Shown: piece after piece, positions 22,689 through 25,526 of the stretch
Layout of the letters: each line of letters starts with the position of its first letter
Position numbering within the stretch: the stretch's first letter is position 1
Program-made: the position numbers and the translations under genes
The notes under the pieces: generated by a model
Database searches by the model: none
What the model was told of the DNA's origin: nothing
The model's input: only the letters and a program-made list of their open reading frames with translations
From: Salpingoeca rosetta
Taxonomy: Eukaryota > Protista > Choanoflagellata
Direction of reading: 5' to 3'
Length of the DNA: 64,000 nucleotides
NCBI GenBank assembly: GCA_033442325.1
Contig: JAWQFM010000014.1
Location: forward strand, 773,792-837,791

Positions 22689-23118
22689 TGCGGTGACGGA
22701 GGACAAGGAGGATCAACAGACGTTCGTCATGCACCACCACCACTCACCAAGCAAGCCAGCCAGCAAACAAACAAGCAAGCGTTGCCAATCTCACAGCCCA
22801 AAACGGCAAATGCCAACGTGGGCTTACCACCAACACTAAAACGAAGCCACCCTCGCTCCCTCACAGCCACAGGGTGCGATGCGTTGTGCGCAATGGAAAG
22901 AAGGACAGGATAGAGAGGGGAGGGAGGAGGCCGAAGGTGGAAGGTGGTGTGGGTGGACGGATTGGATTGGACAGGCGGAGGGTTGTTGGGCGGTGGCCGT
23001 GTTGTGGGCCAGCGATTTTTTTTTTTCCAGTTTGGCTTCTTGTTTTCTTTCAAAAATTGTTGATGCAGATTCGATGCTCGTTTAATCGAAATCACAAGCG
23101 CAAGCAAGCGAAGTCAAC

Positions 23119-25026
23119 TCAGTTGCGGCTCTTCTTGGACTTGTTGAGGAAGTCGGAGTGCTCGACGTAGGGGTTCTTGGAGATGGCCATGTCTGCCCAC
23201 AGGTCAGGGGTCAGGTACGTGTACGTCTGGCGGATGGCCTCGAACGTTGCCTTGGCTGTTGGTGGTGATGAAAAAAAGGACAAGGGAGCAAAGGAGAGGG
23301 GGGAGAAACCACGCAGAGAGCGAGCGAGTTGGTTCGTGAGTTGCATGGCGCACAAGTGCATGAAAGTTGAAGACAACGCAGAAAGCAGATGATGCAGACA
23401 ACAACACCACGGAAGAAAGAGAAAGAAGCAAGAAGAGAGAGAGAGAAAACACATGCTTGTGTGGACAGCAGTTCTCAGTAGACTGTCGTGAGAACTTGAA
23501 AGCTCATCACAAAAGCACAACTTTGTCGTGCATGAGATCAGAGAGTTGGGTTAAAGATTTGATATCATCCCAGAACTGCGACCACAGCACAAGTGAAGAA
23601 AAGCGAGAGAGAGAGAGAGAGAGAAACACCAACAAGAACGAGCAACGAGAGACGACGAGCAAAGGCCGCCAAGCATGCATGGTACGTGGCGAGGGGAAGT
23701 CAAGGGGAAACAAATACACATCAGAAAGATACAACAGCAACAAAAAAGGGCGCGTGTGCGACGAGAGCTACTGTTCTCAGTAGACTGTCGTGAGTTGGAA
23801 AGATACTCATCACAGGGTGCAACTTTGTTGCGATAAATCAGAATGAGTTGGGTTAAAATTTGGTCATCATCCCCGAAGAGAGCCCAAATCACACACACAA
23901 CATGAAGAGAGAGAGAGAGAGAAGGGGGGGGGGGAGGAGGAAAAACAAAAGGGGAAAGCAGAGACGGAAGAGACGGGATCAGACACAAGAGAAGAGGAGG
24001 ACACTGCTATTTCTCAGTAGACTGTCGTGAGAACTTGAAAGCTCATCACAAAAGCACAACTTTGTCGTGCATGAGATCAGAGAGTTGGGTTAAAGATTTG
24101 ATATCATCCCAGAAACAGAAGAGTCCAAATAAAAAGAAAGGAAGAGAAGAGAGAAAGAGGAGACAGGGAGAGGAAAGAGGAGAGAGGAGAAGATTGGAGA
24201 GAGAACAAGTACGTGTTGTGCTGCACAGACCCGATGCAAAGAAAGCAACAGAGCTGTTGTTGCTTCGCGTGTACATTGGGTCTTGCCTCTCACCAACAAC
24301 CAAACGCAAACACAAAACATCCAACGCAAGCGCACACGTGTGTCATTCAAAGGACGTACCAAAGTTGCCGAGGGTGGCGGTCTGGCCACGGGAAGCCGTG
24401 TAGCAGTCGTCGATACCGGCGAGCTGGAGCAGCTTCTTGGGGGTAGGGGCGGCAACAATACCGGCACCGCGAGGCGCGGGGATGAGACGCACAGTGACGC
24501 TACCGCAGACACCGGTGGTCTTCATGGGCACGGTGTGGGGATCACCAAGCATGTTACCCCAATAACCACGACGCACGGGGAGGAGGCTCATCTTGGCGCA
24601 GAGGAGGGCGCCACGGATGGCGCCGGCAACCTCCTTGGAGCACTTGACGCCGAGGCCAAGGTGACCGTTGCTGTCGCCGAGGGCAACAAAGGCCTTGAAG
24701 CGGGTGCGCTGACCAGCGGTGGTCTGCTTCTGCACGGGGGTGATCTTGAGGACCTCGTCCTGCAGAGAGTCGCCGAAGAAGAAGTCGATGATCTCGGGCT
24801 CCTTGATGGACAGGGAGTGCTGGTAGATCTCCTCGATGGACTTGATGCGGCGCTCCTTGACGAGGCGGCCCAGCTTGGTCACGGGCTTCCACTCCTTGCG
24901 CTCCTCGCGGCCACGGCCACCACCACGGCCACCACCACGACCGCCACCACGGCCACGGCCCTCGCCACCACGGCCCTCGCCGCGGCCGCGACCACTGCTT
25001 TCACCGGTCGGTTGCTTGTCCGCCAT
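23119..25026 (-). CDS. RPS2: 40S ribosomal protein S2 (uS5); exons 25026-24360 and 23255-23119
   Basis: RGG-rich N-terminus, [56 protein letters not shown] intron 24359-23256 joins TLGNF|[18 protein letters not shown] in frame. Confidence 0.97.
23468..23579 (-). ncRNA. Box C/D snoRNA copy A (dual guide; snR73/SNORD35-type D guide, snR69-type D' guide)
   Basis: Sense strand: box C GGATGA, D' CTGA, C' GTGATGA, D CTGA, and an 8-bp terminal stem GCAGTTCT/AGAACTGC. Guides TCTCACGACAGTCTA and AACCCAACTC are antisense to the conserved LSU stretch GAGCUGGGUUUAGACCGUCGUGAGA. Confidence 0.9.
23773..23878 (-). ncRNA. Box C/D snoRNA copy B (diverged; snR73/SNORD35-type D guide, snR71/SNORD29-type D' guide)
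   Basis: Box C ATGATGA; D' guide AACCCAACTCATT followed by CTGA; internal hairpin GCAAC-AAA-GTTGC; C' GTGATGA; D guide CTCACGACAGTCTA followed by CTGA. Confidence 0.9.
24010..24115 (-). ncRNA. Box C/D snoRNA copy C (identical to copy A from box C to box D)
   Basis: Exact ~104-nt duplicate of 23472-23575 with unrelated flanks; terminal stem TTTCT/AGAAA. Confidence 0.9.
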
Positions 25027-25526
25027 TGCTGCGTCAGTTGGTGTGTGCGGTTGTGTGCGTGAGTACGTGTATGAGTGTGTGTGAGACCAGAGATGAGGCA
25101 CGCACGCACGCACGCACAAGACAAAAAAGAGCTCAACAACGACAACAACAACAACAACAACAAAACCATGCACCCTCCAGCGCCAGCACTGTAACCCTGC
25201 TCTTCCGCTCACGTGTTGTTGTGGTCGATGTCTTGCTTCCTTGGAAGGGAAAAAAAAGGCACTGCGGGACACTTTACACCGAGCAACTGTTCCTCAATTC
25301 ATTTTACATAGAGTCGTGTACCACAGTTTGGTATTTTATGGTTTGCCACTGGCTTTCTTGCCTGTTGTGGGTAAAATACAACCACACACGCACACGCACG
25401 CACGCACACACACGCACACGTGCACTGGCTGTTCTGAATTGCCTGCTGATCTTGATCTTGCTTCCTCAACGCTCTTTGCTCTCTGCTCTTTGCTCTTTGC
25501 CCTCGTCCGCCCTCTGTAACACTTGT

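What the first reader, a model, noticed from the sequence alone, without database searches (positions are those of the whole stretch)
23256..24359. Polycistronic cluster of three box C/D snoRNAs inside a single RPS2 intron
Seen: the only coding intron of RPS2 (1104 nt) holds three sense-strand C/D'/C'/D snoRNAs. Each has a terminal stem, and pyrimidine-rich spacers separate them. The uS5 frame is continuous across the intron, so no coding exons lie between them. Known: vertebrate intronic snoRNAs follow a one-per-intron rule with exonucleolytic release from the debranched lariat; intronic clusters are more typical of plants and some invertebrates. Human RPS2 hosts H/ACA RNAs, and U29/U35 sit in other hosts. 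Inference: release needs endonucleolytic cleavage or nested non-coding splicing in this holozoan.
Basis: partly seen in the sequence, partly recalled or inferred. Interest (0 to 1): 0.8.

Follow-up and report, generated by a model that had tools for sequence, protein, structure and literature searches.

The report
Triplicated snoRNA in one RPS2 intron
The only coding intron of the ribosomal protein uS5 (RPS2) gene of the choanoflagellate Salpingoeca rosetta holds three copies of one methylation-guide box C/D snoRNA; a relative has one copy in the same intron, so this is a local duplication of a kind already known from plants and flies.

Summary
The window is Salpingoeca rosetta (GCA_000188695.1). 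uS5/RPS2 lies on the minus strand and has one coding intron, 23256-24359 (1104 nt, GT..AG). About 14,000 spliced RNA-seq reads join 23255 to 24360, and no joint inside the intron was listed.

The intron holds three sense-strand box C/D units: c1 24011-24114, c2 23774-23877 and c3 23472-23575. Each has C, D', C' and D boxes, a terminal stem and an internal hairpin.

They are not three different snoRNAs. They are paralogues of one dual-guide snoRNA. c1 and c3 are identical; c2 has diverged everywhere except boxes and guides. Both guides match the peptidyl-transferase region of LSU rRNA: the D guide the snR73/U35 site, the D' guide the snR69/snR71/U29 sites. Dictyostelium DdR16 has the same two guides in the same order.

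A related organism (Logan contig L002; uS5 83.5% identical) has the intron at the same codon and phase with one orthologous copy, so S. rosetta expanded one to three.

Untested: discrete mature RNAs, how the units are separated, and S. rosetta's own rRNA. The spacers are pyrimidine-rich and unstructured, with no RNase III-type hairpins. Intronic snoRNA clusters are known (rice, Drosophila, Ostreococcus). The scan also noted this stretch separately (s1-434398).

The parts
24360..25026 (-). uS5/RPS2 coding exon 1 (ATG at 25026; 222 codons plus 1 base)
   Evidence: Translation. RNA-seq depth is 4,000-11,000x on the gene's strand.
23256..24359 (-). The single coding intron: 1104 nt, GT..AG, phase 1, 67% pyrimidine on the sense strand
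   Evidence: Joint 23255^24360 is seen in 9,205 + 5,052 reads and in a contig of X13. No internal joints were listed. Intron depth is 5-67x.
23119..23255 (-). uS5/RPS2 coding exon 2, ending with the stop codon
   Evidence: It aligns with the relative's exon 2.
24011..24114 (-). snoRNA copy c1. C box 24104-24110, D' guide 24081-24094, D' box 24077-24080, C' box 24043-24048, D guide 24018-24031, D box 24014-24017. Outer stem pairing extends to about 24004-24121.
   Evidence: DNA contigs of run X1 join it to its own two flanks (table 8).
23774..23877 (-). snoRNA copy c2, the diverged paralogue. A 2-nt insertion between the D' guide and the D' box shifts the predicted D' target by 2 nt.
   Evidence: Boxes and guides match c1 at 54 of 55 columns, other columns at 33 of 55 (Fisher p 5e-7).
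23472..23575 (-). snoRNA copy c3, 100% identical to c1. It has a perfect 7-bp terminal stem, GCAGUUC/GAACUGC, spanning 23468-23579.
   Evidence: fold -36.6 kcal/mol, z -3.75. Run X1 contigs join it to its own flanks.
23878..24010 (-). Spacer c1-c2: 133 nt, 81% pyrimidine, essentially unstructured
   Evidence: MFE -7.1 kcal/mol, z +0.2. Composition.
23576..23773 (-). Spacer c2-c3: 198 nt, 72% pyrimidine, no structure beyond shuffled controls
   Evidence: z +1.1. Composition.
25029..25212 (-). 5'UTR intron of the same gene (184 nt, GT..AG); no snoRNA boxes seen in it
   Evidence: Loose ends at 25028 continue with the sequence found at 25213 onward.

Best explanation
The intron carries three intact paralogous genes for one dual-guide box C/D snoRNA. 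The highly expressed uS5 pre-mRNA supplies their transcription.

Shown:
- The intron is removed as one unit.
- Each unit has the full C/D'/C'/D layout, with a k-turn-compatible end (terminal stem, 3-nt bulge, GAUGA opposite CUGA) and an internal hairpin.
- Boxes and guides are conserved, while linkers and flanks are not.
- A relative has one orthologous copy in the same intron.

Inferred:
- An ancestral single copy was duplicated locally to three. c1 and c3 were either homogenised by gene conversion or are a recent duplicate.
- Each unit assembles with the core C/D proteins on the nascent intron, helped by its external stem. The units lie 216-245 nt from the splice sites, which suggests assembly independent of distance to the splice site.
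- After splicing and debranching, exonucleases trim to the 5' end of c1 and the 3' end of c3.
- Separating the three units needs at least one cut in each unstructured pyrimidine-rich spacer, followed by trimming, as in plant polycistronic and intronic clusters.
- The mature RNAs guide 2'-O-methylation of LSU rRNA next to the peptidyl-transferase centre. In all copies the D guide points to the yeast C2959 / U35-snR73 site. In c1 and c3 the D' guide points to the C2948 / snR69 site. In c2 it points to the A2946 / snR71-U29 site.
For: Splicing as one unit: (14,257 junction reads; no internal joints; intron reads only on the gene's strand).

snoRNA anatomy.

Selective conservation: c1 vs c2, boxes and guides 54/55 identical against 33/55 elsewhere (p 5e-7); c1 vs the relative, 51/57 against 35/77 (p 7e-8). 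Flanks are not homologous beyond low complexity, yet every copy keeps flank complementarity with different letters: c3 GCAG/CUGC, c1 CUG/CAG, c2 GCU/AGC, relative UGC/GCA.

Ortholog: in L002 the uS5 is 83.5% identical and the intron sits at the same codon and phase. That intron is 373 nt and holds one unit with the same boxes and guides.

Guides: Rfam alignments to DdR16 cover both guides, and snoZ161_228 covers the D guide. The site spacing A, +2 C, +13 C fits yeast Am2946/Cm2948/Cm2959, guided by snR71/snR69/snR73 (PMC5199042) and equated with U29, snoR69Y and U35 (PMC2780460).

Both identical copies are real: a DNA run gives the 104-nt unit at about 2.3 times the depth of its flanks, and contigs link each copy to its own flanks. 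All 16 variant sites seen in intron reads lie outside the three units (tables 3 and 4).
Against: No read data show discrete RNAs of about 100 nt. The two raw-read runs are mRNA-type libraries, and they show no pile-up of ends at the unit borders (table 6).

The Rfam scores are below the gathering thresholds.

The C box has G where the consensus has U.

Both guides carry an A opposite a C of the usual eukaryotic LSU sequence. In c1 and c3 this falls on the nucleotide predicted to be methylated by the D' guide. The relative has G there. The D' guide therefore works as described only if S. rosetta rRNA has U at that place, or if the mismatch is tolerated. I could not read S. rosetta rRNA (one search was inconclusive).

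No hairpin suited to an RNase III-type cut lies in the spacers, so the nuclease is unknown.
Confidence: 0.75

Rival explanations
1. The excised intron is trimmed only from its two ends. The main stable product is then a long RNA of about 640 nt (24114 to 23472), capped by snoRNPs at c1 and c3 with c2 inside. This would be a sno-lncRNA-like species, formed alone or alongside some mature snoRNAs.
For: In mammals two snoRNAs in one intron give exactly such RNAs (PMC11028025). The spacers have no structure that would recruit an RNase III-type enzyme. The two identical copies sit at the two ends of the array.
Against: Depth between c1 and c3 is no higher than in the rest of the intron, though these libraries may not capture non-polyadenylated RNA. 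Boxes and guides of the internal copy c2 are conserved, which suggests it acts as a guide in its own right. Plants and Ostreococcus process intronic clusters into single snoRNAs (PMC7671301).
Confidence: 0.2
2. Only one unit matures per intron molecule, or only some copies are productive. Exonucleases run through units that failed to assemble, so no endonuclease is needed and the extra copies mainly raise the chance of a product.
For: It needs no unknown enzyme. The units lie far from the splice sites (216-245 nt), where splicing-coupled assembly is inefficient in vertebrates (my knowledge of Hirose and Steitz 2001).
Against: All three keep intact boxes, guides and terminal stems. c2 has a retargeted D' guide that is preserved, which argues that it is used.
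Confidence: 0.15
3. Nested or recursive splicing places each unit in its own spliced piece, so the one-per-intron rule is kept.
For: None was found.
Against: No joint inside 23256-24359 reached even 3 reads among about 98,000 laid reads, against 14,257 reads for the outer joint.
Confidence: 0.03
4. The units are a repeated sequence that resembles snoRNAs by chance, or they are dead copies.
For: Rfam scores are below gathering. No small-RNA evidence exists.
Against: An ortholog lies in the same intron of another species, with conservation confined to boxes and guides. Two independent rRNA complementarities are shared with DdR16. Flanking stems are kept with different letters.
Confidence: 0.02

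Closest known systems
Dictyostelium snoRNA DdR16 (Rfam RF01566)
   Same: It is a dual-guide box C/D snoRNA with the same two antisense elements in the same order. The D' guide pairs with the GAGCUGGGUU stretch of LSU rRNA, and the D guide is CUCACGACAGUCU, including the same A at position 6 from box D (alignment).
   Different: The score is 32-36 bits against a gathering score of 70. The S. rosetta units have a linker about 22 nt longer between D' and C' that forms a hairpin, a G in the second place of the C box, and an A instead of G in the D' guide. I did not check the genomic setting of DdR16.
U35/SNORD35, yeast snR73 and plant snoZ161/Z228 (RF00328)
   Same: The D guide targets the same LSU position (yeast Cm2959; PMC5199042, PMC2780460). 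The best Rfam hit here is snoZ161_228 (37 bits, E 4e-5).
   Different: The score is below the gathering threshold of 45. In fungi and human the 2946/2948 sites are served by separate snoRNAs (snR71/U29, snR69; PMC2780460), whereas here both sites sit on one RNA. From memory, the human copies lie in RPL13A and RPS11, not RPS2.
Intronic snoRNA gene clusters of rice, Drosophila and Ostreococcus
   Same: Several snoRNA genes lie in one host-gene intron and are transcribed with the host, often as paralogous isoforms (PMC2780460 citing Liang 2002 and Huang 2005; PMC7671301).
   Different: This case is in a choanoflagellate, for which I found no published snoRNA survey. It consists of three copies of one snoRNA in a ribosomal protein gene. 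Processing has not been examined.
Mammalian sno-lncRNAs (Prader-Willi region, SNORD49A/B host intron)
   Same: More than one box C/D snoRNA lies in one intron, so end trimming alone cannot free them (PMC11028025).
   Different: No long RNA has been shown here. There are three units rather than two, and all have canonical rRNA guides.

Membership tests
Box C/D snoRNA | C box (RUGAUGA) near the 5' end and D box (CUGA) near the 3' end, brought together by a terminal stem (k-turn) | tested here: met
   In all three units and the ortholog the order is stem, 3-nt bulge, GAUGA ... CUGA, stem. The stems are 3-7 bp plus outer pairs. The C box reads GGGAUGA, one departure from consensus that the ortholog shares.
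Box C/D snoRNA | Internal D' and C' boxes | tested here: met
   D' is CUGA and C' is UGAUGA, both perfect in all copies. A hairpin between them is kept through one one-sided and one two-sided base change between c1 and c2.
Box C/D snoRNA | An antisense element of 10 nt or more ending next to D or D', placing a known rRNA methylation site opposite the fifth nucleotide | tested here: inconclusive
   The D guide forms 14 Watson-Crick pairs over 15 positions with one A-C mismatch at position 6, and the fifth position falls on the Cm2959 site. The D' guide forms 10 contiguous pairs only if the rRNA has U at the C2948 place. That variant exists in nature, but S. rosetta rRNA could not be read. Site numbering is from PMC5199042.
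Box C/D snoRNA | Accumulates as a discrete RNA of about 70-120 nt bound by fibrillarin, Nop56, Nop58 and Snu13 | not testable with these tools
   Only mRNA-type libraries could be laid, and the single read-laying run was used.
Rfam DdR16 / snoZ161_228 | Score at or above the family's gathering threshold | tested here: not met
   35.9 against 70, and 37.0 against 45. The gathering-threshold scan of the window gave no hit.
Intronic snoRNA cluster | Two or more snoRNA genes inside one intron that is spliced as a single unit | tested here: met
   One joint, 23255^24360, and no internal joints. Three units lie inside it.
Intronic snoRNA cluster | Each member is released as its own mature snoRNA from a common precursor | not tested
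   No suitable reads were available.

The most novel reading that the evidence does not exclude
Choanoflagellates would process multi-snoRNA introns in one of two ways. Either they use a plant-like, hairpin-independent endonuclease acting on unstructured pyrimidine tracts, or they leave them as snoRNA-capped long RNAs. In the first case the animal one-per-intron habit is a derived restriction. In the second case sno-lncRNAs predate animals. The A-for-G changes in both guides would then track U-for-C changes in the peptidyl-transferase region of S. rosetta 28S rRNA, that is, guide and target co-evolving at the ribosome's core.
Probability: 0.2. Interest if true: 0.55.

Novelty: new member of a known kind. 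Interest (0 to 1): 0.3.

Why it matters
This is a clean, datable example of snoRNA gene expansion inside a host intron in the closest living relatives of animals: one copy in a relative, three here. One copy has been retargeted by a 2-nt insertion.

It also shows that the dual-guide layout seen in Dictyostelium DdR16 occurs in Holozoa as well, whereas fungi and human use separate snoRNAs for the same sites.

It offers a small, genetically tractable test of how several snoRNAs leave one intron. Otherwise it is an ordinary feature: intronic snoRNA clusters and their paralogous isoforms are well described elsewhere.

Tried and rejected
- The Rfam gathering-threshold scan of the whole window gave nothing. 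Only the permissive scan found the units.
- To learn whether S. rosetta rRNA has U opposite the guide A's, I scanned metagenome contigs for the U variant of the LSU stretch. The variant is common in archaeal- and bacterial-looking contigs and occurs in about 15 eukaryote-looking ones. One contig (L018) has both U's. This says nothing about S. rosetta itself.
- A run search with L018 had only 2 sampled words and did not list S. rosetta runs, so it was inconclusive.
- Two further protein searches, restricted to the C-terminal and N-terminal parts of uS5, were meant to pull out other choanoflagellate genomic contigs. They returned mostly transcript-length contigs and animal proteins.
- L103 proved to be an animal-like gene with a different intron position, and L104-L106 are intronless short contigs. 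All were dropped. Monosiga brevicollis could not be reached.
- The intron parts outside the units and the spacers were folded to look for a further snoRNA or a cleavage hairpin. The 3' part reached only z -2.40, the others were weaker, and no H/ACA boxes were seen.
- The alternative 5' and 3' transcript ends seen in reads are not in the window.
- A paper search for the Dictyostelium DdR RNAs found nothing useful.
Protein hits with human or primate names were left untouched.

Full report
**Source and gene.** An exact look-up of the encoded protein places the window on scaffold GL832966.1 of assembly GCA_000188695.1. A preprint names this assembly as the Salpingoeca rosetta genome. On the minus strand, an ORF from the ATG at 25026 to 24360 joins in phase 1 to 23255-23119. 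The product is a 267-aa protein with no internal stop. It carries the Ribosomal_S5 and S5_C Pfam domains and is 68-75% identical to many animal uS5/RPS2 proteins.

**The intron.** It runs from 23256 to 24359, is 1104 nt long, starts with GUACGU and ends with AACAG.

**Splicing.** I laid raw reads of two stranded S. rosetta RNA-seq runs and contigs of two older runs on 23050-25150.
- The joint 23255^24360 is carried by 9,205 and 5,052 reads and by a contig of run X13.
- The other joints listed at this junction lie within 1-3 nt of it, have 2-11 reads each, and mostly carry extra letters. A 26-nt repeat variant inside exon 1 is described at the end of this report.
- No joint inside the intron reached the listing threshold of 3 reads.
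- Intron depth is 5-67x against 4,000-11,000x on the exons, and all of it is on the gene's strand.

The intron is therefore removed as one piece. A 184-nt 5'UTR intron (25029-25212) also exists, so "the only coding intron" is the correct wording.

**The three units.** The repeat search finds one 104-nt family with three members: c1 24011-24114, c2 23774-23877 and c3 23472-23575. c1 and c3 are 100% identical. Read on the minus strand, each unit has:
- a 5' stem strand, a 3-nt bulge and GAUGA;
- a 13-14-nt antisense element followed by CUGA (D');
- a hairpin;
- UGAUGA (C');
- a second antisense element followed by CUGA (D);
- then directly the 3' stem strand.

This is the geometry of a box C/D k-turn. 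The C box as usually written reads GGGAUGA, with G where the consensus has U. c3 has a perfect 7-bp terminal stem (GCAGUUC/GAACUGC). c1 and c2 have 3-4 bp next to the boxes plus further outer pairs. The predicted folds of c1 and c3 close with these stems, with z -2.6 and -3.75. The D-guide pattern occurs three times in the window against 0.16 expected.

Rfam finds nothing at gathering level. In a permissive scan it aligns all three units end to end to Dictyostelium DdR16 (35.9, 35.9 and 32.0 bits; GA 70). It aligns their 3' halves to plant snoZ161_228 (up to 37 bits; GA 45; E 4e-5).

**Evidence that they are functional genes.**
- Between c1 and c2, boxes, guides and stem are identical at 54 of 55 columns. 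The remaining columns agree at only 33 of 55 (Fisher p 5e-7).
- The internal hairpin is kept through one one-sided change (G-U to A-U) and one two-sided change (A-U to G-C).
- Homology stops sharply at the unit borders. The flanks share only low-complexity similarity, yet each copy's flanks pair with each other using different letters.
- All 16 variant sites seen in intron reads lie outside the 312 nt of the units. Two caveats apply: the variants may be linked, and reads inside c1 and c3 map ambiguously.
- A DNA run gives the 104-nt unit at about 2.3 times the depth of its flanks, and its contigs tie c1 and c3 to their own flanks (table 8). The two identical copies are therefore not an assembly artefact.

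**Ortholog.** The closest uS5 relative in the protein collection lies on a 3.3-kb genomic contig assembled from run SRR14727191 (L002; GC 43%; organism not named).
- Its spliced uS5 also has 267 aa and is 83.5% identical.
- Its intron sits at the same codon and phase (…LGNF|AKAT…) and is 373 nt long.
- It holds exactly one unit (1003-1132) with the same stem, bulge, GAUGA start, the same D', C' and D boxes and both guides.
- Its D'-C' linker is longer and also folds into a hairpin.
- Against c1, boxes and guides agree at 51 of 57 columns and the rest at 35 of 77 (p 7e-8).

The host-snoRNA pairing therefore predates the split of the two organisms, and S. rosetta went from one copy to three. Each unit is preceded by a (CU)n tract (families D2-D4), which may have favoured unequal exchange. 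The sharp 104-nt identity of c1 and c3 on either side of the diverged c2 suggests gene conversion or a recent second duplication. I could not decide between these.

**Targets.**
- The D guide (CUCACGACAGUCUA before CUGA) matches the conserved LSU stretch UAGACCGUCGUGAG. This is the stretch targeted by the plant family and by DdR16.
- The D' guide (UUUAACCCAACUCU before CUGA) matches the adjoining GAGCUGGGUUUA stretch.
- By the fifth-nucleotide rule the predicted sites are a C, a C 11 nt upstream of it, and, for c2 with its 2-nt insertion, the A 13 nt upstream of the first C.
- This spacing is exactly that of yeast Cm2959 (snR73), Cm2948 (snR69) and Am2946 (snR71) (PMC5199042). These are equated with U35, snoR69Y and U29 in PMC2780460.
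- DdR16 carries the same two guides on one RNA. The dual-guide layout is therefore shared by Amoebozoa and this holozoan, whereas fungi and human use separate snoRNAs.

**An open problem with the guides.** Both S. rosetta guides have an A opposite a C of the usual eukaryotic sequence.
- In the D guide this is position 6. DdR16 also has A there, the relative has U, and the plant snoZ161_228 consensus has G; from memory, human U35 does too.
- In the D' guide it falls on the target nucleotide itself in c1 and c3. The relative has G there.
- Either S. rosetta 28S has U at these places or the mismatch is tolerated.
- A metagenome scan shows that LSU genes with U at the first place are common in prokaryote-like contigs and occur in about 15 eukaryote-like contigs. 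One of these has both U's. The first option is therefore possible.
- I could not read S. rosetta rRNA.

**Release of the three RNAs.** In the canonical pathway, exonucleases trim a debranched intron up to the bound snoRNP. With three units they can free only the 5' end of c1 and the 3' end of c3.
- The two spacers are 81% and 72% pyrimidine and have no structure above shuffled controls. The 133-nt spacer folds at only -7 kcal/mol. A yeast-type RNase III cut at a hairpin is therefore unlikely, and a single-strand cut as in plant clusters fits better.
- The alternative known from mammals is that no cut occurs and a long RNA with snoRNA ends accumulates (PMC11028025). That would be about 640 nt here.
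- The mRNA-type libraries available cannot tell these apart. Depth between c1 and c3 is not raised, and no ends pile up at the unit borders.
- The units lie 245 nt from the 5' splice site and 216 nt from the 3' splice site. Together with their external stems, this points to assembly that does not depend on distance to the branch point. That point rests on my knowledge of vertebrate work, not on a test here.

[quoted passage not shown] Introns with two snoRNAs occur in mammals (PMC11028025). I found no paper on choanoflagellate snoRNAs. Unchecked notes of this scan mention further multi-snoRNA introns in the same genome, and the same stretch was noted separately for its guides (s1-434398). This is a new member of a known kind: real and neatly documented, but not surprising.

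**A second form of the gene.** About 72-75% of RNA reads differ from the window at two synonymous sites (23155, 24934). Many reads leave the window sequence at 23121 (3' end) and 25032 (5' end) for sequences that are absent from the 64-kb window. A few dozen reads and one contig show a length variant in the RGG repeats (24910-24935). DNA contigs of run X1 branch at 23121 and 24315. A second allele or gene copy therefore exists. Its intron reads carry variants only in the spacers, so it seems to hold the same cluster.

Noticed in passing
window 23121, 23155, 24934, 25032: A second form of the uS5 gene is expressed. About 72-75% of reads carry synonymous changes at 23155 and 24934. Thousands of reads switch at 23121 and 25032 to UTR sequences that are not in the window. 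DNA contigs of another run branch at 23121 and 24315. This is an allele or an unassembled gene copy, and its intron seems to hold the same cluster.
   Followed up: partly
window 25029-25212: A 184-nt GT..AG intron lies in the 5'UTR and ends 2 nt before the ATG. It is supported by 800 + 561 loose read ends that continue at 25213. No snoRNA boxes were seen in it.
   Followed up: partly
window 24910-24935: A length variant in the RGG-repeat region of uS5: a 'goes back 26' joint with 22 extra letters, seen in a few dozen reads and one contig.
   Followed up: no
L003-L102 (metagenome contigs), e.g. L018:328-355, L024: LSU rRNA genes with U instead of C at the E. coli 2579 equivalent (GAGUUGGG) are frequent in archaeal- and bacterial-looking contigs and occur in about 15 eukaryote-looking ones. 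L018 also has U at the 2591 equivalent. This peptidyl-transferase-region position is less fixed than I had assumed.
   Followed up: partly
window 24205-24285 (minus strand): A long imperfect hairpin (GACCCAAUG ... CAUCGGGUC, with an inner AGCAACAACAG/CUGUUGCU stem) lies in the 5' part of the intron. The fold of that part is not better than shuffles (z -1.2). There is no H/ACA box pattern and no counterpart in the relative's intron.
   Followed up: partly
L002:1133-1145: In the relative, the snoRNA's 3' stem is followed by a run of about 10 A before the outer pairing strand. Whether this is a trace of retroposition or chance is unknown.
   Followed up: no
P0001: The top uS5 hit is a 388-aa protein filed under the trematode Echinostoma caproni on a 5.4-kb contig. 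It scores higher than the true close relative. It may be a duplicated or fused model, or a contaminant contig.
   Followed up: no
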